A DNA stretch of 63,809 nt, filler included, from Octopus bimaculoides (lineage: Eukaryota): the NCBI RefSeq assembly GCF_001194135.2. It is 7 parts of 6 records of this genome, joined end to end, with 100 filler letters (N's around TTAATTAATTAA, not from the genome) between each part and the next. Parts side by side here need not be neighbours in the genome. Positions count along the whole stretch, not along the records: positions 3,119 to 32,656 come from NC_068984.1; 6 more parts are not named here. One strand, 5' to 3'. This document shows, one piece after another, positions 3,119 to 49,059 of this stretch (its first letter is position 1; each line of letters starts with the position of its first letter). A program made the position numbers and the translations under genes. The notes beneath the pieces were generated by a model. It was not told where the DNA came from, ran no database searches, and saw only the letters and a program-made list of their open reading frames with translations.

Positions 3119-3595
3119 GATGTGTTAATCCCCATGTGGGTACATGGAGTAAATAAACAATTAAATATAAAAATTAATAATTTCTTAAAGTATGTGTTAA
3201 TCCCCATGTGGGTACCTGAAGCAAATAAAATCATACCATAAACAATTAAATATAAAAAATAATAATTTCTTAAAGTATGTGTTAATCCCCATGTGGGTAC
3301 CTGGAACAAATAAAATCATAGCATAAACAATTAAATATAAAGTAACCGATATAATACATGGAGTAAATAAACAATTAAATATAAAAATTAATAATTTCTT
3401 AAAGTATGTGTTAATCCCCATGTGGGTACCTGGAGCAAATAAAATCATAGCATAAACAATTAAATATAAAAAATAATAATTTCTTAAAGTATATGTTAAT
3501 CCCCATGGAGTAAATAAACAATTAAATATAAAAATTAATAATTTCTTATAGCATGTGTTAATCCCCATGTACCCACACTTTGTGGACACCCTGTA
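3119..3595. repeat. Tandem array inside a Tc1/mariner-type MITE end
   Basis: Six GTTAATCCCCATG-anchored units (3124, 3196, 3281, 3410, 3495, 3557), ending in TIR-like CCCCATGTACCCACACTTTGTGGACACCCTG-TA. Confidence 0.7.
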
Positions 3596-3751
3596 AAGCG
3601 AACTAAGTAAAGCGAACTAAGGATTTATCTACCCAGTGAAGTATCTTGTAATTATTTATTTTAAAGAATTCTCTATGTTCCTTTCAATTCGATGTGGTGA
3701 GCTAGATCTGGATTATATCAGAGTGCTAATAAGGTACTTATCCGGATTCCA

Positions 3752-4052
3752 AGTCCCTATTCGGTTACTTATTCAATCATACCGAGTCCCTATTCGGTTG
3801 CTTATTCAATCATATCGAGTCCCTATTCGGTTACTTATTCAATCATACCGAGTCCCTATTCGGTTGCTTATTCAATCATACCGAGTCCCTATTCGGTTGC
3901 TTATTCAATCATATCGAGTCCCTATTCGGTTGCTTATTCAATCATACCGAGTCCCTATTCGGTTGCTTATTCAATCATATTGAGTCCCTATTCGGTTGCT
4001 TATTCAATCATATCGAGTCCCTATTCGGTTACTTATTCAATCATATCGAGTC
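3752..4052. repeat. 33-bp minisatellite, 9 copies
   Basis: AGTCCCTATTCGGTT(A/G)CTTATTCAATCATA(C/T)CG repeated with period 33. Confidence 0.95.
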
Positions 4053-7569: not shown

Positions 7570-8297
7570 TTTATTTTTCAACATAGTCTTCTTTGCAGAC
7601 CATACGCCTTTCCCATCGGCGTTGCCGTGTTTTGGATCCCATTGGTGAAGACACTTTCATCCTGTTGCTTAAAGAAGTTATCAACAACAGACATGACGAC
7701 ATCAACACTGCGATACTGGTTCCCAGCCCAGTGTCTTTTTCTTATTGGGAAACAGATGATAATCGAATGGGGCCAAATCAGGAGAATAGGGAGAGTGGTC
7801 AACCAGTTCAAAGCCACACTCATGAACAGCAGCCATTGAAACCAAGGACTTGTGTGCGGAAGTATTGCACATGGAAGTAATCGCCTGCCGTCCATCACCA
7901 TGTAGTGTACACGATCAATGTTTCCAACGGTGGTGGCAGTTGCAGGACGTAAAATCCTTGGGTCATCTTCAAGACACTCCCTTCCATTCCTAAATTCAGT
8001 TGTCCCCTTTTGTACCATTGGAACTGGAGCGTCATCCGCTAATGTAGCAATCATGTCCGTATGAATGGCGTTGGGGGCTAAACCCTTTTTCTGCCGGTAC
8101 TTAATAGCATCACGATGTCAACTTTTGTCCATTTTCAAGTGAAGTCTCTACTCGTTACTTTTGAAGCCCTCTGTCAACGCTCAGATTTCAGAAACAAAGC
8201 AATAATTTATAAGAACTGAAATTATTGCAAACAAGATTTCACAAATCTAGCATCACTACTCCTTCATAGTCAACCTATGAACTTTTCAGCCCACCTT
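7570..8297 (-). mobile_element. Mariner (Tc1/mariner) transposon remnant, internally deleted
   Basis: N-terminal HTH region (IATLADDAP...EFRNGRECLEDDPR..RPATATT..NIDRVH.MVMDGRRL, ATG near 8132) is joined to C-terminal HPPYSPDLAPSDYHLFP-like and GNQYRS.D.V.S.VD.FF.QQDES-like sequence in shifted frames. A terminal-repeat-like GGGCTGAAAAGTTCATAGGTTGAC sits at about 8269-8293. Confidence 0.85.
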
Positions 8298-9617: not shown

Positions 9618-9854
9618 AAGGCGGCGAACTGGCAGAAATGTGAGCACGCCGGGCGAAATGCTTAGGGGCTTTTCGTCTTTCTTTACGTCCTGAGTTCAAA
9701 TTCCGCCGAGGTCGACTTTGCCTTTCATCCTTTCGGGGTCGATAAATTAAGTACCAGTTACGCACTGGAGTCGATGTAATCGACTTAATCCCTTTGTCTG
9801 TCCTTGTTTGTCCCCTCTATGTTTAGCCCCTTGTGGGCAATAAAGAAATAAGAA
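9618..9854 (+). mobile_element. SINE family A, full length
   Basis: GGCGGCGAACTGGCAGAA...GAGTTCAAATTCCGCCGAGGTCGACTTTGCC...GGGCAATAAAGAAATAAGAA. Confidence 0.9.
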
Positions 9855-10175
9855 ATGTGAGCACGCCGGGCGAAATGCTTAGGGGCTTTTCGTCTTTCTT
9901 TACGTCCTGAGTTCAAANNNNNNNNNNNNNNNNNNNNNNNNNNNNNNNNNNNNNNNNNNNNNNNNNNNNNNNNNNNNNNNNNNNNNNNNNNNNNNNNNNN
10001 NNNNNNNNNNNNNNNNNNNNNNNNNNNNNNNNNNNNNNNNNNNNNNNNNNNNNNNNNNNNNNNNNNNNNNNNNNNNNNNNNNNNNNNNNNNNNNNNNNNN
10101 NNNNNNNNNNNNNNNNNNNNNNNNNNNNNNNNNNNNNNNNNNNNNNNNNNNNNNNNNNNNNNNNNNNNNNNNNNN

Positions 10176-11074: not shown

Positions 11075-11558
11075 AGGCGCAGGAGTAGNNNNNNNNNNNN
11101 NNNNNNNNNNNNNNNNNNNNNNNNNNNNNNNNNNNNNNNNNNNNNNNNNNNNNNNNNNNNNNNNNNNNNNNNNNNNNNNNNNNNNNNNNNNNNNNNNNNN
11201 NNNNNNNNNNNNNNNNNNNNNNNNNNNNNNNNNNNNNNNNNNNNNNNNNNNNNNNNNNNNNNNNNNNNNNNNNNNNNNNNNNNNNNNNNNNNNNNNNNNN
11301 NNNNNNNNNNNNNNNNNNNNNNNNNNNNNNNNNNNNNNNNNNNNNNNNNNNNNNNNNNNNNNNNNNNNNNNNGTCCCCCCAATATCGCTTGACAACCGAT
11401 GGTGGTGTGTTTATGTCCCCGGAACTATGCGGTTCGGCAAAAGAGACCGATAGAATAAGTACTAGGCTTACAAAGAATAAGTCCTGGGGTCGATTTGCTC
11501 GACTAAAGGCGGTGCTCCAGCATGGCCGCAGTCAAATGACCGAAACAAGTAAAAGAGT
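11075..11558 (+). mobile_element. SINE family B (middle in gap)
   Basis: AGGCGCAGGAGT head start; after the gap GCGGTTCGGCAAAAGAGACCGATAGAATAAGTACTAGG...GGCGGTGCTCCAGCATGGCCGCAGTCAAATGAC tail. Confidence 0.85.
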
Positions 11559-12266: not shown

Positions 12267-12946
12267 CGTTTGTAGTTCATACGCTTGTTAAAGTTATGCA
12301 TAAAGTAATGTCAGTCTTTTCTTTAAATCTTTTCTCCCTTTTTCTTTTGTTATTTGTTTCACTCATTGGATTGCAAGCCATGCTGAGGCACCAACTTGAA
12401 AGAATTTGGTCGAAGAAATCACCCAGGGCTTATTTATTTTTCAAGTCTGGTACAATCTCTTTCTACCAAACCACTATATTACGGGGGGCGTAAACAAACC
12501 AACAACGGCTTTAAAGCGATGAGGAATCAAGACATATACACAGATACACACATACGCACACAGACACACACATACGCACATACACACACATATACACACA
12601 CATACGCTCATATACATTTATATGTATATACGATGGGCTTCCACGCAGTTTTCATTCACAAGGCACCCATCCATCTACGGCTACAGTAGAAGAAACTTAC
12701 TGAAGGTGCTGCGTAGTGGAACTTAACCCGAAACCACTTGTTACCTTAGTAAGCTTCTTAAACAAATAACTATTGAGATTAGTTTTCGAAAATCACTCTT
12801 ATATTATTGTAATTTAAAATTTTACTAGACTGAAAACTCAAAATTAATATATTACTATCTTGTAATCTAACATCTCGTATTTGAGGCCTCGGGGACCATT
12901 TACACAGTTTTAGTTTCTATTGCACAGCAAGCGTTATTTTTCAATA

Positions 12947-13160
12947 TACAGTAATCACTCGCCATATCGCGGTTCACTTATCGCGCCCTCAGCACATCGC
13001 GGATTTTTCTGGTTAATATATGTAAATTCATATCTCAGGTTCCTCAGCATATTGCGGGTTTCTGCAGCCGATAGGTATTTATATGGTTTTAGATGTTAAT
13101 TATACCTGTGGTAAAATAAGCCTTTTCACGTCTAAAAATTAATAAATTAATAAATAAAAT
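12947..13160 (+). mobile_element. pogo/Tigger-like MITE fragment
   Basis: Starts TA-CAGTAATCACTCGCCATATCGCGGTTCAC.TATCGCG, a Tigger-type terminal repeat with internal ATCGCG repeats; other end not seen. Confidence 0.5.
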
Positions 13161-13164
13161 ACAA

Positions 13165-13310
13165 GGGTGGTGAGCTGGCAGAATCGTTAGCACGTTGGGC
13201 CAAATGCTTTACAGTGTTTCGTCTGCCGTTTCGTTCTAAGTTCAAATTCCGCCGAGTTCGACTTCGCCTTTCATCCTTTCGGGGCCGATTAAATAATTAC
13301 CAGTTATGCA
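13165..13310 (+). mobile_element. SINE family A, 3'-truncated
   Basis: GGTGAGCTGGCAGAATCGTTAGCACG...GTTCAAATTCCGCCGAG. Confidence 0.85.
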
Positions 13311-14133
13311 CTTCCAAGCCGGACCCTCAAAGTAGCAGGAACGCTGGGACCGGTGCATTGCTGCGCAGGGTAACTATTTTGAAGGAGATAATGTTAAAAC
13401 TTGGGTAAATAAGTTGCTTTTTTTATTAAGCATGACTCGTCTGAGAACGTTTTGTTAAAAATATTCTTGGATCTTTTTTAAAACGGGGGCCACATTTTTC
13501 ATTAACGAAACACTTTGAAACTTGGAACACTGGTAGAATGTGTCATATAAAACATCTTTTTCTCTTAGTCTTCTTAAAAAAAAAAGAAATCCATAAATTA
13601 TTCCATGTTAAAGTTGTCGTATTTCTGTAATTTCAACCAATCACTGACGTCCATTCAGCCGATATACATTAAGTGCCGACTACATAAACAAACGATTCTG
13701 AAACAATTAACCCTAACCCTAACNNNNNNNNNNNNNNNNNNNNNNNNNNNNNNNNNNNNNNNNNNNNNNNNNNNNNNNNNNNNNNNNNNNNNNNNNNNNN
13801 NNNNNNNNNNNNNNNNNNNNNNNNNNNNNNNNNNNNNNNNNNNNNNNNNNNNNNNNNNNNNNNNNNNNNNNNNNNNNNNNNNNNNNNNNNNNNNNNNNNN
13901 NNNNNNNNNNNNNNNNNNNNNNNNNNNNNNNNNNNNNNNNNNNNNNNNNNNNNNNNNNNNNNNNNNNNNNNNNNNNNNNNNNNNNNNNNNNNNNNNNNNC
14001 CCTCACAAAATTTTGGTCACGCAATAACACTGAACTCGGAACTATGTGGTTGGGAAGCAAGCCAGTAAATAAATAGTAAAGAAGAGGAAAGAAGCAATGA
14101 AAATAGAAGATTATATGTCCAAGAGAGAGAAAC

Positions 14134-17124: not shown

Positions 17125-17492
17125 TTTTATTCCTTTCTATTGGTTTCAGCCATTTGACTGCGGCCATGCTGAAGCACCTCCTTTTAGTCGAACAAATCGA
17201 CATCAGGACTTATTGTTTGTAAGCCTAGAACTTATTTTATCGGTGGTCTTTTTTGCCGAATTCTTAAGTAAACACACCAACATCGGTTGTCAAGCGATGG
17301 TGGGGGACAGATACACACAAACACACACACACACACACGCCAGGTTACTTTCGGTTTCCGTCTACCAAATCTACTCACAAGGCTTTGGTCGGCCCGACGC
17401 TATAGGAGAAGACACTTTTCCAAGGTGCCACGCAGTGGAACTGAACTCGCGACCATATGGTTGGTAAGCAAGCTACTAACCACACAGCCACA
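17125..17492 (-). mobile_element. SINE family B
   Basis: Full head-to-tail reverse-complement match. Confidence 0.9.
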
Positions 17493-17527
17493 GTTTTTTT
17501 TTATCACATCATTAAAAAAAATCTGTT

Positions 17528-17972
17528 AGAGTGGCTGTGTGGTAAGAAGCTTGCATTCGAACCACATGGTTCCAGGTTCAGTCCCACTGCGTAGCACCGT
17601 GGGCAAATGTCTTCTACTATATTCTAGGGCCGACCAAAACCTTGTGTGTGNNNNNNNNNNNNNNNNNNNNNNNNNNNNNNNNNNNNNNNNNNNNNNNNNN
17701 NNNNNNNNNNNNNNNNNNNNNNNNNNNNNNNNNNNNNNNNNNNNNNNNNNNNNNNNNNNNNNNNNNNNNNNNNNNNNNNNNNNNNNNNNNNNNNNNNNNN
17801 NNNNNNNNNNNNNNNNNNNNNNNNNNNNNNNNNNNNNNNNNNNNNNNNNNNNNNNNNNNNNNNNNNNNNNNNNNNNNNNNNNNNNNNNNNNNNNNNNNNN
17901 NNNNNNNNNNNNNNNNNNNNNNNNNNNNNNNNNGTGTGTGTGTGTGTGTCTTTATGTCTGTGTTTGTCCCCA
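17528..17972 (+). mobile_element. SINE family B (5' part; centre in gap)
   Basis: GAGTGGCTGTGTGGTAAGAAGC...GGTTCAGTCCCACTGCG...GGGCAAATGTCTTCTACTAT. Confidence 0.85.
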
Positions 17973-23383: not shown

Positions 23384-24895
23384 TGTATGTATACACACAC
23401 ATAAGCATAGATATATATGTTTCTATTTCTGCAATTATACGCAGGATTACGCACACGCGCACACAGCCGCGCGTACACACTCATGCAAACATCTACACCA
23501 ATCCACCCACACATTCGTAGTATTCTTGTCTGCGTCTTACAGTCTGTTTCTTTCTCTTTCTCTCTCTCTCTCTTTCTTCAATCTGTCTCTGTTTCTGTCT
23601 CTCTCACTCTCTCTCTTTGTATCTCTCTCTCTCTCTCTCTCTTTTTCTTTGCTTCTCTCCAAAGTTAAAAAGTTGTTAGCTGCATACTTTGAAAATGAAA
23701 CGTAATTTATGCAACAACAAAATAAATAAATAAAAACTATCCGTCTTTTATTGAATTTTCATTGTATTTTTTTTCTCTCCCTCTCTCTACCAATGCACGA
23801 CATAGAAACTGAATTAGATAAATCGCTATCACGCTATATGAAGCTGTTACGTGAGTTAACTTTTTAGGGATTTAATTAATGTTTTGAATATATCTTATCT
23901 ACTTCAGGAAGAGTTCCCAGTTGGATTACTGAGGGCTCATGTCAATTTGTTGGTAATTGATCAGTCATGAATGCAGTACATACCAAGTTATTTTTAGACT
24001 ATCAAATGTGCAATGAAAGCTCTAAGCGATTTTAGCAACATATTTCTACTCACACAAACCAACGTCTGAATAGTTTGATATTAAAAAACACATATATATA
24101 TATATACATATACATAAATGATAGCATTGTTTCCAAAGTTTATTTTAAACTGACTAAATTGGTAAGATGACTTATATATTTGGTGGTTTAATATTATAGC
24201 ACTTGATAAACTTACGTTTACTCTTTTAGTTGTTACATGACTAAGTTCCTTCGCAGATTATTAGTTAATTTTAACAGTTTTTATTGATAAAAATCGATGT
24301 TTTACACGAAAAAATAATAACTAAAATATAAACACTAACCTGTACACATGTTAAAACATGTCTGAATACGATATTTCAAAGTAACCAAATTTAGTTATTA
24401 GAATAGAGTAGCTAACGTGGAGAATTGTATGATATTACATAAGCTATAAAATGAAATTTTGATAATGCGAATTGAAAGATAAAGTGAACTACACAAGTGA
24501 AGATCGAATAATAGTTTGAGTTCTGCTTTGTATTTCAATATTTCGGGGTTGTGGCTGCTTCTTCATAACAAGTAGAGAAATTAGAGACATTGTAATATAA
24601 GGCAATCTATTAAAATACAAGGGAAAACTTCAACTGATGTTCTCTTTTCACTATTGTATTTCATCGCGTTGTTTCAGCCGTATCAATTTTCATATCTAAT
24701 GATTTAGTCAAATTACAGCTTTATTAGACGTATTTAATTGTAGTGTTTAGTTCATTATTCAGAGTAAATTATTAGTGAAAGATTATTTAGCACCGAATCC
24801 TGCTTCTAGATAAAACGAATCACATGCTTTTTCAAAAATCTCTCGTTGTTAGTTGCTGTTGTTATTACTGTTTAATTTCAGATCATCTCTGACAG

Positions 24896-25345
24896 AAGAA
24901 CTACAATAATGAGACGTTTCACTCATCTTGCATACATTGTATCCAGAGCAAGCTTCCTTGTAACTGGTGCTTCAAAGAATATTTATGCATCACAAACAGG
25001 ACGGAAAAACAGTTCAGATATTGTTCTTGGAAATGCCTATACCGGATCAAAATTATATCCACGGATTGAATAAGATTCAGCTGTCATATCTGTTGCCTCT
25101 GGTACTGAGGAAAGCGTTTCCTTGAAGGCAATGCGCTTAAAAAATTTCCAAACAGATATCAAATGTAAATTCAAACTGAACATGAAGTTACATGCCACTA
25201 AAATAAGCACAGACAAAATCGTTTCGGATCCAGTTTCATTTTCATATAAGTCATATTTTCATATCAGCCAGATGTTCCTTACTGAAATATCGAAATGTGC
25301 CACTTGAGATTACATGGGACTCCAAATTCAACAATGACAAGCCGT
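24896..25345 (+). pseudogene. Plexin-like exon remnant (PSI domain + following TIG-like domain), frameshifted and with an in-frame stop
   Basis: Manual translation. Frame from 24896 gives HSSCIHCIQSKLPCNWCFKEYLC (plexin PSI pattern CxxCxxSxxPCxWCxxxxxC). After a 1-nt shift in the A5 run (25005-25009): ENSSDIVLG...YPRIE*DSAVISVASGTEESVSLKAMRLKNFQTDIKCKF...VSDPVSFSY. After a second shift: RNVPLEITWDSKFNNDKP, resembling plexin-A LPVELTVVWNGxFNIDNP. TAA at 25071-25073. Acceptor-like AGs at 24880-24881 and 24894-24895. Confidence 0.7.
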
Positions 25346-25794
25346 CTTTATAGGACTACATTTTTGCTTGCTTTCTGCTTTTCACAAAATTGTAGTAAGA
25401 TTTAAGAGAAATATGGTTGTTATTTCTAGTTGGCTGCATAACGATGCAGAACCTTTCTCATTGGCTCATCTGTGAGGAACGTTTCTCAAGAAGGTATTTC
25501 ATGATTAATTATGTGATATGACATGTTGAAGCCTCATTTACGTAAGACAATTTGTATTTTTGCTTCTTTCTTTTCTTTGCTAATAATTAACACTAAAAAA
25601 ATCAAATCAAATAAAGAACAAAATAGCTTAAATGACTTCATTAAAATATTTTCAGACTGATACCCTTCAGCAGTGGTGACAGTGGGGGAAACTGAAATTA
25701 CACCAGACAATTAGTTATAGTTGCTGACGACTATTTGGCACCTTTGGTATCATATCACAAAAAGACTAAGAAATAGTAGTATAACCAATTGTTA

Positions 25795-26195
25795 AGTGTC
25801 GGTGTGAGGTAAGAGGTTTTGCTTGCCAAGCACGTAGTTCCAGGTTAAGTCCAACTGAGTGGCACTTCTACTATAGTCTTGGCCGACCAAAGTCTTGTGA
25901 GTGCATTTGCTAGACGGAAACTGAAAGAAGTCCGTTGTTTCTTTGTGTGTTTGTGTGTGTGTGTGTGTGTATGTGTGTGTGACTTTGTGTTTTTGTCCCC
26001 ACCACCACAGCTTGACGACCGTTGGTGCATTTATGTTCCCCGCATATTAGCTGTTCAGCAAAAGGGACAGAAGTGATAAGTGCCATTCTTGAAAAATTCA
26101 TAAGAATTGGGGTAGAATCGTTCGACTAAAATTCTTCGAGGTGCCCCAGCATGGTCGCTGTCTAATAACTGAAACAACTAAAAGATAAAAGGATA
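25795..26195 (+). mobile_element. SINE family B, diverged
   Basis: Head, GACGGAAACTGAAAGAAG, (GT)n, tail CCCCAGCATGG...ACTGAAACAA. Confidence 0.8.
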
Positions 26196-26367
26196 AATCG
26201 TTGTTATTTAATTATAGTCTTTGATAGATACAGACACAACTGTATGATTTGCAAGCTCTTTTGGTTTAGTTCTACTGTGAAGTAACTTGACAACTTTCTT
26301 TTCTACTTACCCAAGGTGCCATGTAGTGGAACTGAACCCAGAAACAGTATATATGTATATATATTGT

Positions 26368-26640
26368 GAAGGCGCATGTCTTAGTGGTTAGGGCGTTGCT
26401 CTCACGATTGCGAGATTGTGGGTTCTATTCCCATACCTGTCGTTGCGTTGTGTTCTTCAGCAAAGCACTTCATTTCACGTTGCTCTGCGATCATTTCGAC
26501 ATCTGACATGCGGCACCCAGTTGCACCTGTACAGGTAATTTCGACTTGGAGTGAGCTTATGTCTACGCAAACATTTGATCACTATAAACAAATCATCTGT
26601 GTGGTTATTCAGTAAGAAATTGTCGAATCCTTGTATGTCG
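26368..26640 (+). mobile_element. SINE, family D-type head
   Basis: GGCGCATGTCTTAGTGGTTAGGG...GGGTTCTATTCCC...TTCAGCAAAGCACTTCATTTCACGTTGCTC. Confidence 0.7.
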
Positions 26641-26659
26641 TCTAACGATGGGAGAATCC

Positions 26660-26817
<158 letters not shown>

Positions 26818-28051
26818 AAAGTCATTATTTAATGATTTATCGGTGGCCAGCGTACTGAAAAGACCATAATGCTAATATTTAGGTACAATCATACAGTATA
26901 ATTATAATAAGAGCGCTGAGACTACAACGCCTGTACACTAGAAGTAGTCCCCGAATGGTCCACAATCCATTTAAGTTATAACTCCATTACCACAAGGCTG
27001 TATGCGAGGAAAATGGACAGAAGGGATTTATAAAATATTGTGGACAACACTATATCTCAAGATTTCTTGGTTTACGATAGTAAAATCGTTTTCTACTCCT
27101 CAGTAGTGTAAACCGATCCTAAATAAATGAGACGTACATATACATATCACAAACACAGTCGTACAAATACGAGCATGTACATGTATTTCACATATATATA
27201 CAAAGCAAATTAACCATTATGGTCTTGCTAGTACGCTAGCCACAGATAAGTCATTAAATAATGACATTATCCTGTTTATGTATAAATATATATTAATTCA
27301 CTCCGTAAATATATTTGCTGCAGAATTATTCTGAGTAAGTAACCGCATGGCTGAAATGTACGTTCGGGATTTTGCTCCTACAGCATCCACTGATACCTGA
27401 TAACAACTGCGTAACCATATGATGCAAATTCCAGATTATGCTATTTTTGTTTGGAAGAAATTTTGTGTATATTACCTGGGGCGATGGTGCAAAACAGGTG
27501 ACTGGGGCAAAATGAGTAATTTCTAATTTCTCGTTATTTTCTTTGTACCTGTTTGAAACCATTATATTGCAAGGATTGCATCATCATTTTGTACTGTTGC
27601 ATCATCTTTGGGAGTATAAATTAGTCAGAATAGTTGTTGCTGTTGTTGTTGTTGTTAAAGATACGAGGGTTTGAAACATAATCAGATGACAGGTACTTTT
27701 TTCGAGATTTTTTATTCCTCATCTTTAACCCGATTGTAATTGGGGTTGCTAATAAAATATTCTTTTCTCTGTTGGATTCCAAATCATTTTTTTTCACACT
27801 CATGTCTAATTTGATAATTTTCAATTTTCAAAAAGTGATGTCTAAATTATGGCAAAATTAGTAATGACTAATTTCAATAATTTCTTCTCCTTAACTGCAT
27901 GTTGTGTAAACACATCAGAAATAGAGCTACTCCAGCAGATCGTGAAGAATCTATAAAGAATAATTTATGTTGAGTTTTTAGATTTAATCGAGTTGTGTTA
28001 ATTTCATATCGAATCCCATTTTTCCATGATTCTCCTTCATTCGACCAATAT

Positions 28052-28456
28052 CTTTTTACTTTTTTACTTGTTTCAGTCATTTGACTGCGGCCTTGCTGGA
28101 GCGCCGCCTTTAGTCGAGAAAATCGACCTCAGGACTTATTCTTTGTAAGCCTAGTACTTATTCTATCGGTCTCTTTTTGCCGAACCGTTAAGTTACGGGT
28201 ACGTAAACACACCAGCATCGGTTGTCAAGCGATGTTGGGGGGACACACAGAGACACACAAACACACATATATACATATATATACACATATATACGACGGG
28301 CTTCTTTTAGTTTACATCTACCAAATCCACTCACAAAGCTTTGGTCGGCCCGAGGCTATAGTAGAAGACACTTGCCCAAGGTGCCACACAGTGGGACTGA
28401 ACCTGGAACCATGTGGTTGGTAAGCAAGCTACTTATCACACAGCCACTCCTGCGCC
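28052..28456 (-). mobile_element. SINE family B, full length
   Basis: Near-consensus reverse complement from GGGCGCAGGAGTGGCTG to the AAACAAGTAAAA tail. Confidence 0.92.
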
Positions 28457-29689: not shown

Positions 29690-30660
29690 GCGATCATATG
29701 ACGAATATTCTCTTACGGAATTTCTCGCCAGGTTTCAAGCAGTAATCTCAAAAGATCTGGCTTTGAAGATGCTTTGTTGTTCTTCTTATGAAGTGTTTTG
29801 TCCATTACGTCCCAGAAGTGTTCAATAGGGTTTATATCTGGTGATTGGCTTGGCCATAGAAGCTTTTTAATACAATTCTCATCTAACAAATCTTGGGCCA
29901 TTTTAGCCGTGTGACAAGGAGCCCTTCTCCCATAAATAACGAGTCTTCTTTGGCCATTTCACCACTGGAGAAGATTTGGAGGAGTCCTTTCTTATTTTTT
30001 TACTGCTTACAAGGGACTACACACAGAGGGGACAAACAAGGACATACAAACGAATTAAGTCGGTTATATCGACCCCAGTGCGTAGCTGGTACTTATTTAA
30101 TCGACCCCGAAAGGATGAAAGGCAAAGTCGACCTCAGCGGAATTTGAACTCAACGTAACGGCAGACGAAATACCGCTAAGTATTTCGCCCGGCGTGCTAA
30201 CGTTTTTGCCAGCTCGCCGCCTAAGCTCGCCGCCTAAGCTCGCCTGGAGGAGTCCTTTCTGCAATATGGACACATTTGTCTGAGTTTATGTTTCCCTCAC
30301 ACTCCACCAGCTCTCCACCATCTCACTGGCCCAATCTTTTCTGCGCTTGATGTTGGCTTGTGGAAGATATGGCTTCCTTCTTGCTGCTCTGCCATAGTAA
30401 CCAAGTTTATGGAGATACCTGGCATCTGTTCTGGGACTGATATTAACTTGTTCTGCTATATCAGAAGACTTGTGACGAGTGCTATCCTCCACACCTCTCT
30501 TAACAAAGAGAAGGATCCTATCAGAAGGCCCTGGTTGATCTAGGTGAGGTGATATGGACTCCTTCTCTCTGGTGAATTGCGCAATCACTACATTAACTGT
30601 AGAAATCGGGACTATATCCATCTCCAGAATGACCCACAATACGGCTTCTTTGAAATTCAG
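29690..30660 (-). mobile_element. Tc1-family transposase remnant, interrupted by SINE A
   Basis: ISPRTDARYLHKLGYYGRAARRKPYL..ANIKRRKDWA (DNA-binding linker) and LLWPSQSPDINPIEHFWDVM (Tc1 WPxQSPDLNPIE motif). Confidence 0.9.
29993..30244 (-). mobile_element. SINE family A inserted in Tc1, 16-bp TSD
   Basis: TGGAGGAGTCCTTTCT at 29977-29992 and 30245-30260. Confidence 0.92.
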
Positions 30661-30842
30661 ACAGTTCCAAGGCCTCTTTTGTACATGGCGGGATTAAACA
30701 GTCACATATAGAACCTGAAACATAAAAAAATGTCTATTAATAAAAGATATACAGCTTTACAAGTGAGAATGAACATAAAACAATGTTTTATGGAGTGTCT
30801 ATTTACTTCCGTCGTGTCTGTACATATGTAAGTATGTATGTC

Positions 30843-48110: not shown

Positions 48111-48661
48111 TGCGCGCGCACACACACATATCAATACACCCATAATTATTTCTTTTCTCTTTTTATTCAGTCTACACATTAAGACATGAGGCGCTGAACA
48201 TTGTTACATGTGACCCTGTCATGTACTGCATTATGGCTTGAAACTGCTTTCAAAATATACTCCGATGCATTCGATCTTCTATACATTCTGTGTTCACCAT
48301 ACATCTGTTCTGGCTTTTATACACTCAGTATTTCTCTGTGGGTGTATACATACATGCATAATGTATGTGTGAATGAACGAATATCGGGCGAAAGGACCAG
48401 AATTTCTTTCTCTTTCTAACGTTCTGTATTCAATTTGATGTTTGTGTTGTTTTAATCACAATTGTCGTCGTCATCATTATCGATATCTTTCTCCATTATA
48501 GTAACTCACTCCGCCTTCGCCGCCATCACACTGAAAAGTCCCAGGCTTTCTCTTCACCCCTGTGTCCATCTTATTTTCTACCCACTCATTTATCTCCCTG
48601 TGGTCACCTCTCTCCATTACCTCCCTTGTCATCGGCTCTCCAAGATCTACAACACCCTCCT

Positions 48662-48709
<48 letters not shown>

Positions 48710-49059
48710 CAGTTTTCCTCAACATCAGCAATTACCCTCTCCACCTCCTCCATTGGGTACAAAGAGAAACCCTTTCAGAGCCGATCACCATTTTTATTTT
48801 GTTAGTAAAAAGGAAAGAAATTCTGATTTCATTGACGACCAACGCTCCCACCTCTTCCACCTACATATTGTTCCTTAACACGCTCACGTTTATATGTGTG
48901 TGTGTGTGTATACATCCATCTTTCATTTCTGGTCTCTCCTCTCCCATTCCTTCATTTGTTGGAGAACCGTATCTGTCCTCTCCTCCTCCTCTTGTTCAGC
49001 ATTGTTATTACTGTCACATTGTCACCTACTAATGGTGACACTTTTCCCCCACCAGCCAT

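What the first reader, a model, noticed from the sequence alone, without database searches (positions are those of the whole stretch)
24896..25345. Hidden plexin-like exon (PSI + TIG) broken by frameshifts and a stop
Seen: three short frames on + read HSSCIHCIQSKLPCNWCFKEYLC, then (removing one A from the run at 25005-25009) ITNRTENSSDIVLG...YPRIE*DSAVISVASGTEESVSLKAMRLKNFQTDIKCKF...IVSDPVSFSY, then RNVPLEITWDSKFNNDKP. Knowledge: plexin ectodomains have a second PSI domain (HSSCxxCVxSxxPCxWCxxxxxC) followed by CPxI..VxxGxxxxIxL...CxF...CD...F.Y...VxWxGxFxIDNP, in this order and with similar spacing. Inference: a dead plexin copy. Several expected cysteines are one base from Cys (TAT at 25056, AGT at 25011). 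The ORF track shows only a meaningless 61-aa piece, so automated annotation would miss it.
Basis: partly seen in the sequence, partly recalled or inferred. Interest (0 to 1): 0.75.

Follow-up and report, generated by a model that had tools for sequence, protein, structure and literature searches.

The report
Dead plexin-A1 gene fragment in octopus DNA
This is a broken, non-functional 430-base copy of part of the octopus plexin-A1 nerve-guidance receptor gene, most likely copied from spliced mRNA rather than being a hidden exon; it is an ordinary pseudogene fragment.

Summary
The plexin assignment holds. The mended peptide passes Pfam's cut-offs for PSI_PlexinA-B and the plexin TIG_2 domain. 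Its best match among 1.8 billion proteins is octopus plexin-A1 (E 1e-52), residues 648-779, and 84% of in-register codons are identical.

The intact protein is 100% identical across three Octopus species in this stretch. The window copy carries:
- a TAA in place of Tyr698;
- three frame-shifting insertions of 1, 17 and 8 nt;
- a 6-nt deletion;
- 19 missense changes, including two lost structural cysteines.

It is therefore dead, not an assembly error. No other plexin part lies in the 29.5-kb piece.

I disagree with calling it an exon. The copy runs uninterrupted across four positions where plexin-A genes of a brachiopod and/or a catfish carry introns. Octopus keeps the brachiopod intron positions at all four sites I could test from protein models, including HSS|CMHC, which the window reads straight through. 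A processed (mRNA-derived) pseudogene fragment, cut short at both ends, is the best reading (about 0.65).

Interest is low.

The parts
24920..25003 (+). Block 1: HSSCIHCIQSKLPCNWCFKEYLCITNRT, matching plexin-A1 residues 648-675 (the cysteine knot of PSI2). It includes the equivalent of the ancestral exon junction HSS|C, within the Ser650 codon (24926-24928), just before Cys651 at 24929.
   Evidence: Frameshift-aware alignment to O. bimaculoides plexin-A1 P0015. Pfam PSI_PlexinA-B above its cut-off. Intron position taken from Lingula and catfish loci and from the N-terminus of P0026.
25004..25004 (+). Frameshift 1: one extra base, either G25004 or equivalently one A of the 25005-25009 run. The parent reads ..NKT-KNSSD.., while the window reads ACG G AAA AAC AGT.
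25005..25247 (+). Block 2: KNSSDIVLGNAYTGSKLYPRIE*DSAVIS...IKCKFKLN--MKLHATKISTDKIVSDPVSFSY, matching residues 676-758 (end of PSI2 plus most of IPT2/TIG_2). Lesions: Cys693 to Tyr (TAT, 25056-25058); Tyr698 to stop (TAA, 25071-25073); a two-codon deletion (Gln735, Asp736) between 25181 and 25182; Cys751 to Ser (TCG, 25224-25226). Equivalents of ancestral junctions lie at 25052|25053, 25142|25143 and 25238|25239.
   Evidence: tblastn gives 82% identity over 84 aa. Per-codon table. Pfam TIG_2 hits.
25248..25264 (+). Frameshift 2: a 17-nt insertion, AAGTCATATTTTCATAT. It looks like an imperfect tandem duplication of the preceding TCATTTTCATAT.
25265..25282 (+). Block 3: QPDVPY, matching residues 759-764 (EPDVPY), back in the first frame.
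25283..25290 (+). Frameshift 3: an 8-nt insertion, TGAAATAT, which carries a TGA stop.
25291..25344 (+). Block 4: RNVPLEITW (residues 765-773), followed by a degenerate tail DSKFNNDKP that is only loosely like GPNERPLDN. Detectable homology ends here.
   Evidence: No significant homology further downstream or upstream of 24920.

Best explanation
Window 24920-25344 (+) is a non-functional relic copied from the plexin-A1 gene of an octopus. It covers only residues 648-779 of the roughly 1,874-1,890-residue receptor: the second PSI domain and the second IPT/TIG domain of the ectodomain.

It most likely arose when a piece of spliced plexin-A1 mRNA was reverse-transcribed and inserted into the genome (a processed pseudogene). 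The copy was either incomplete from the start or was later trimmed at both ends. With no promoter, no start codon and no selection, it has since drifted. It now carries one nonsense codon, three frame-shifting insertions (1, 17 and 8 nt), a 6-nt deletion and 19 amino-acid replacements, two of them in disulfide cysteines. It does nothing for the cell.

Shown here: plexin-A1 origin, the extent of the copy, every lesion, and the absence of the rest of the gene from the piece. Inferred: that the template was spliced RNA, from intron positions in other animals and from octopus protein models; and that an intact parent gene sits elsewhere in the same genome.
For: Origin
- Pfam PSI_PlexinA-B and TIG_2 score above their curated cut-offs.
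- The best of 1.84 billion proteins is XP_036358669 plexin-A1 of O. sinensis (E 1e-52). Its cluster includes O. bimaculoides, O. vulgaris and Argonauta plexin-A1.
- 104 of 124 in-register codons are identical.

Dead
- The intact region is 100% identical in amino acids among three Octopus species and about 90% identical to Argonauta. The window copy has the stop, the frameshifts and the cysteine losses listed above.
- Pfam scores fall from 60.7 to 40.5 bits (TIG_2) and from 36.4 to 25.7 bits (PSI) relative to the parent.

Fragment
- tblastn with full-length plexin-A1 finds nothing else in 3119-32656 at E<1.
- The flanks show no significant homology and no Pfam domain.

Processed
- The Lingula plexin-A2 gene has introns at VHRS|CTSC, before ..QRPGPENCPRIE, at KAMALH|DF, at AME|FAY and at NIQ|VKVYKC.
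- Catfish has introns at THSM|CLSC (same phase 2), NASE|LCPQL, QNRS|YVY and GIK|VHLYKC.
- Octopus matches Lingula at all four sites that protein models can test:
  - the end of P0025, after CQKT;
  - the end of P0024 and start of P0013, at TLEN|KCSL;
  - the partial O. bimaculoides model P0026, which starts exactly at Cys651;
  - the one-residue Gln1063 isoform difference, which falls on Lingula's 1144|1145 boundary.
- The window reads F-H-S-S-C-I-H-C, then K-L-Y-P, L-K-N-F and V-S-F-S-Y without interruption.
- The parent gene spans 627 kb in O. bimaculoides and 567 kb in Argonauta, which fits a gene with many long introns.
Against: The exon-intron structure of octopus plexin-A1 could not be read directly, because no DNA is served for genes longer than 100 kb. 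Arthropod and nematode plexins carry this region as one exon (P0011 and P0006), so intron loss does occur in some lineages.

There is no poly(A) tail, no target-site duplication and no 3' part of the mRNA next to the copy. A classical LINE-made retrocopy would normally keep its 3' end. The species of the window is not known, so the presence of an intact parent in the same genome is inferred rather than shown.
Confidence: 0.65

Rival explanations
1. A DNA-level (non-processed) duplicate of one genomic plexin-A1 exon with a little flanking intron. It would sit either elsewhere in the genome or as a decayed tandem copy inside the 627-kb parent gene. This is essentially the reader's 'hidden exon'.
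For: Only one block of the gene is present in the piece. A good-looking acceptor (pyrimidine run plus tttcag) ends at 24881. Arthropod and nematode plexins do hold this region in one exon. The average intron of the parent (about 20 kb) would put neighbouring exons outside the window.
Against: This needs octopus to have lost four consecutive ancestral introns, while it keeps all four that can be tested. The partial model P0026 starting exactly at Cys651 would then be a coincidence. The acceptor-like site lies 38 nt upstream of the first homologous codon, and the sequence between shows no significant similarity to the parent.
Confidence: 0.25
2. A live plexin exon, or the true orthologue in a poorly assembled octopod genome, whose frameshifts and stop are sequencing or assembly errors.
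For: The piece is a draft with 12 N gaps. One lesion lies next to an A5 run.
Against: The 17-nt and 8-nt insertions, the TAA substitution, two cysteine replacements and 16% amino-acid divergence do not look like assembly errors. The parent protein is invariant among three Octopus species here. A-to-I RNA editing cannot repair frameshifts.
Confidence: 0.02
3. A fragment that has been put to a new use. It could be a poison or alternative cassette spliced into plexin-A1 transcripts, or a source of antisense or small RNA that regulates the parent gene.
For: Nothing direct. AG and GT dinucleotides with fair context exist around it: tttcag at 24881, GTAAGA at 25392 and AAG|GTATTT at 25493. The genomic position relative to the parent is unknown.
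Against: The annotated isoforms of O. sinensis and O. bimaculoides differ only at residue 1063 and in the cytoplasmic part, never in this region. The decay pattern is that of unconstrained sequence.
Confidence: 0.04

Closest known systems
Octopus plexin-A1 (XP_052823911 O. bimaculoides; XP_036358669 O. sinensis), residues 648-779, the PSI2-IPT2 part of the ectodomain
   Same: Collinear, with 84% identical in-register codons and the same Pfam domains in the same order. It shares the octopod-specific absence of the seventh PSI2 cysteine (NSSD).
   Different: It covers only 7% of the protein. It carries a stop codon, three frameshifts, a two-codon deletion and two lost cysteines. There is no Sema domain, no transmembrane segment and no cytoplasmic GAP domain anywhere in the piece.
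Processed (retrotransposed) pseudogenes of multi-exon genes, including truncated fragments
   Same: Homology to a spliced message runs across several inferred exon junctions. The copy has no introns, no promoter or start codon, and shows neutral decay.
   Different: No poly(A) tract or target-site duplication is visible. The 3' part of the mRNA is missing as well as the 5' part, so the copy is an internal fragment.
Mouse Plexin-A2 PSI2-IPT2 crystal construct (PDB 5l74) and Drosophila PlexA (6fkm)
   Same: The mended peptide aligns end to end with 5l74 (residues 3-142). Its PSI motif matches 6fkm.
   Different: Only about 30% identity, and the window copy cannot be translated into a folded module.

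Membership tests
Plexin ectodomain PSI2-IPT2 module | Pfam PSI_PlexinA-B (PF24479) hit at or above its gathering score | tested here: met
   25.7-27.7 bits against a cut-off of 25. The intact parent scores 36.4.
Plexin ectodomain PSI2-IPT2 module | Pfam TIG_2 (PF18020, the plexin TIG domain) hit at or above its gathering score, directly after the PSI domain | tested here: met
   27.8-40.5 bits against a cut-off of 23.4. The order and spacing match plexin-A1 residues 648-779 and PDB 5l74.
Plexin ectodomain PSI2-IPT2 module | Full set of the parent's conserved disulfide cysteines | tested here: not met
   Cys693 to Tyr (25056) and Cys751 to Ser (25224).
Functional plexin gene | Uninterrupted reading frame | tested here: not met
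   TAA at 25071, TGA at 25283, and insertions of 1, 17 and 8 nt.
Functional plexin gene | Sema domain, further PSI/IPT repeats, transmembrane segment and cytoplasmic GAP domain encoded nearby | tested here: not met
   tblastn of the 1,883-aa plexin-A1 against the whole piece finds nothing else at E<1. The parent's introns average about 20 kb, so absence from 29.5 kb is weak evidence on its own.
Processed pseudogene | Lacks the introns of the parent gene | tested here: inconclusive
   The copy is continuous over four positions that are introns in Lingula and/or catfish. Octopus protein models agree with Lingula at all four testable sites, including HSS|CMHC. The octopus genomic DNA was not obtainable.
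Processed pseudogene | 3' poly(A) tract and flanking target-site duplication | tested here: not met
   Homology stops at about residue 779. Only a loose A-rich patch lies about 250 nt further on, at 25594-25635, and no flanking direct repeat was found.
Processed pseudogene | Disabling mutations and decay relative to a constrained parent | tested here: met
   20 of 124 codons are changed, against 0 differences among three Octopus species in the parent.
Duplicated genomic exon (non-processed pseudogene fragment) | Homology bounded by the parent's splice sites, with intron homology in the flanks | not testable with these tools
In the window, no AG directly precedes the first homologous codon.

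The most novel reading that the evidence does not exclude
The fragment lies inside or next to the 627-kb plexin-A1 gene and is still transcribed. It would act as a stop-containing 'poison' cassette, or as a pseudogene-derived antisense or small RNA, that tunes plexin-A1 expression in the octopus nervous system.
Probability: 0.03. Interest if true: 0.45.

Novelty: new member of a known kind. Interest (0 to 1): 0.12.

Why it matters
It matters little. The fragment shows that octopus genomes hold unannotated, decayed pieces of a key axon-guidance receptor gene. Such pieces can mislead homology-based annotation and gene-family counts.

If the mRNA origin is confirmed, it adds one example of retrocopying in a cephalopod genome. 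If the same insertion is found or absent in other Octopus species, it gives a neutral marker for dating. No function is expected.

Tried and rejected
- Word-indexed protein searches found nothing. I tried the mended peptide and a 201-aa stretch of the parent itself, so the index evidently misses these proteins. The exhaustive HMMER search was what worked.
- Fetching the octopod parent locus failed. The gene range is too long for P0015 (627 kb) and P0020 (567 kb), and P0026 and P0013 are not on record.
- Exact look-ups of three window ORFs, meant to place the window in a named assembly, found no record.
- A possible continuation into PSI3 (25429-25493, VGCITM..WLICEERFSRR against ICLTM..WCENKCSIRS) looked tempting. 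It scores no better than control segments: p about 0.035 without frameshifts, and no excess at all with the frameshift-aware aligner. I rejected it.
- An upstream continuation into the previous exon (..FVSVNFTFFDCNV) is not significant.
- Pfam on all ORF fragments of 30 aa or more on both strands of 23650-27400 found nothing. There is no reverse transcriptase or transposase next to the copy.
- Rfam and tRNA scans of the piece found nothing.
- The bacterial promoter and terminator scan is irrelevant for an animal genome.
- A literature search for plexin, octopus and pseudogene found nothing on this.
- Repeat searches show no direct or inverted repeats framing the fragment, only microsatellites and SINE-like copies.

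Full report
**What is there**

The piece (3119-32656) is AT-rich animal DNA of about 32% G+C. It has 12 N gaps and many microsatellites. The only listed ORF there is the 61-aa piece at 25122-25307.

**Is it plexin?**

Yes.
- A frame-mended 153-aa peptide hits Pfam PSI_PlexinA-B (25.9 bits; 27.7 for the first frame alone; cut-off 25). It also hits TIG_2, 'TIG domain found in plexin' (31 bits; cut-off 23.4).
- Against PDB sequences, the best matches are Drosophila Plexin A and mouse Plexin-A1, -A2 and -A4. The alignment covers the whole PSI2-IPT2 construct 5l74.
- An exhaustive HMMER search of 1.84 billion representative proteins gave 12 hits. The top hit, at E 1.1e-52, is a 1,883-aa protein.
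- That protein is plexin-A1 isoform X4 of Octopus sinensis. Its 90% cluster also holds plexin-A1 of O. bimaculoides, plexin-A-like models of O. vulgaris, and plexin-A1-like of Argonauta hians.

The window is therefore octopod DNA and the parent gene is plexin-A1.

**Anatomy of the copy**

I ran a frameshift-aware alignment to O. bimaculoides plexin-A1 and checked it codon by codon. It gives four in-register blocks separated by three insertions.

| Coordinates | Content |
|---|---|
| 24920-25003 | residues 648-675 |
| 25004 | one extra base |
| 25005-25247 | residues 676-758, with a two-codon deletion at 735-736 |
| 25248-25264 | 17-nt insertion, an imperfect tandem duplication |
| 25265-25282 | residues 759-764 |
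| 25283-25290 | 8-nt insertion carrying a TGA |
| 25291-25317 | residues 765-773 |
| 25318-25344 | degenerate tail |

In the blocks, 104 of 124 codons encode the parent's residue. Nineteen are missense and one is TAA in place of Tyr698. Two of the missense changes remove cysteines: Cys693 to Tyr at 25056 and Cys751 to Ser at 25224.

Intact octopus and Argonauta plexin-A1 also read NSS there.

**Is it dead?**

Yes. The intact protein is identical residue for residue in O. sinensis, O. vulgaris and O. bimaculoides from residue 613 to about 830, and about 90% identical in Argonauta. Against that constraint, 16% replacement, a stop and three frameshifts mean relaxed selection. Insertions of 17 and 8 nt are not the kind of error a short-read assembler makes.

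Pfam scores are about a third lower than for the parent: TIG_2 40.5 against 60.7 bits, and PSI_PlexinA-B 25.7 against 36.4 bits.

At 14 sites where Octopus and Argonauta differ, the copy has the Octopus residue at 11. It therefore derives from the Octopus-type gene.

**How much of the gene is present?**

Only this stretch.
- tblastn with the full-length protein finds no other segment in the piece at E<1.
- The sequence upstream of 24920 does not resemble the preceding residues of the parent beyond chance: score 30, controls 25.4 +/- 4.3.
- Downstream of 25345, a PSI3-like string at 25429-25493 does not beat controls.
- The flanks carry no Pfam domain on either strand.
- The flanks are not repeated elsewhere in the piece, apart from a SINE-like element starting at 25795.

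**Exon or cDNA?**

The parent gene spans 627 kb in O. bimaculoides and 567 kb in Argonauta, and its DNA could not be fetched. I used two other plexin-A loci instead.

In the Lingula anatina gene (L001), the region is split by introns at these positions, with canonical GT/AG sites:
- VHRS|CTSC, with the Ser codon split TC|A;
- before ..QRPGPENCPRIE;
- KAMALH|DF;
- AME|FAY;
- NIQ|VKVYKC.

A catfish plexin-A2-like gene (L002) has introns at these positions:
- THSM|CLSC, in the same phase;
- NASE|LCPQL;
- QNRS|YVY;
- GIK|VHLYKC.

At least three of these introns are therefore ancestral to bilaterians.

Does octopus keep such introns? Four positions can be tested from protein models, and all four agree with Lingula:
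- An O. bimaculoides model (P0025) runs off into non-plexin sequence after CQKT.
- O. vulgaris models end and start at TLEN|KCSL.
- The partial O. bimaculoides model P0026 begins exactly at Cys651, that is, after HSS.
- The one-residue Gln1063 isoform difference falls on Lingula's 1144|1145 boundary.

The window reads TTT CAC TCA TCT TGC ATA CAT TGT (F H S S C I H C) in one piece. It is likewise continuous at the equivalents of 691|692, 721|722 and 755|756. The simplest reading is that the template was spliced mRNA.

The pyrimidine-rich tttcag at 24876-24881, which suggests an exon start, lies 38 nt upstream of the first homologous codon. It is probably a coincidence in AT-rich DNA.

**Caveats**

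- Arthropods and nematodes carry this region as one exon, so loss of the introns in octopus cannot be excluded without the DNA.
- The copy lacks a poly(A) tract, target-site duplications and the 3' part of the message. It is an internal fragment, either born incomplete or trimmed later.
- I put 0.95 on 'decayed plexin-A1-derived pseudogene fragment' and about 0.65 on the full statement including the mRNA origin.
- The species of the window is not established. An intact parent in the same genome is inferred, because an octopus is unlikely to do without its plexin-A.

**Comparison with known kinds, and verdict**

This is an ordinary pseudogene fragment: a new, unannotated member of a very well-known kind. 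It has no predicted function. The most novel reading not excluded is a transcribed poison cassette or regulatory RNA tied to plexin-A1. It has no support here, and I rate it at about 3%. Interest is 0.12.

Noticed in passing
window 29716-30693 (-): Remnant of a Tc1/mariner-type DNA transposon. ORF fragments hit Pfam DDE_3 (29716-29958, 37.6 bits) and HTH_Tnp_Tc3_2 (30289-30693, 34.1 bits), and are broken between them.
   Followed up: partly
window 7581-8117 (-) and 13154-13405 (+): ORF fragments that look like decayed mariner transposase. From memory they show a ..SPYSPDLAPFDYHLF.. motif and a ..ERWDRCIAAQGNYFEGD.. C-terminus. Of these, the 7581-8117 (-) fragments and the 13154-13405 (+) fragment were scanned and gave no Pfam hit at E<=0.01; the fragment holding the ERWDRC.. 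C-terminus motif was not scanned.
   Followed up: partly
window 25795-26195; 28049-28448 (inverted); 17307-17650; 11373-11556: Copies, 70-78% alike, of an interspersed repeat of about 400 nt. It resembles the abundant octopus SINE as I recall it. Short pieces also lie at 26305-26346 and 12695-12734.
   Followed up: partly
window 3153-4052: Tandem repeats at the start of the piece: units of 85, 129 and 62 nt at 3153-3569, and a 33-nt minisatellite with 9 copies at 3752-4052.
   Followed up: no
proteins P0015, P0001 and P0020, residues about 645-695: Intact octopod plexin-A1 lacks the seventh cysteine of PSI2 (..CTTNKTKNSSDIV..). That cysteine is present in Lingula (DCLRD), vertebrates (DC/SC) and Drosophila (ENC). 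Argonauta also lacks the fifth (NWC becomes NWY). This points to a lineage-specific change in the disulfide pattern.
   Followed up: no
L001 7553-7690 / 9749-9886 and 48598-48684 / 48857-48979: The Lingula plexin-A2 locus holds near-identical tandem copies of two exons with identical flanks. One copy ends in an N followed by a poly-C run. This is probably a haplotype or assembly duplication rather than alternative exons. The MetaClust model P0004 repeats the first exon in its protein.
   Followed up: partly
proteins P0002 (Parthenolecanium corni), P0003 (Aricia agestis), P0007: Insect proteins made of tandem repeats of the plexin PSI2-IPT2-PSI3 unit (period about 230 aa, up to six units), with no recognisable Sema domain in the part seen. 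This is a stand-alone array of plexin ectodomain modules.
   Followed up: no
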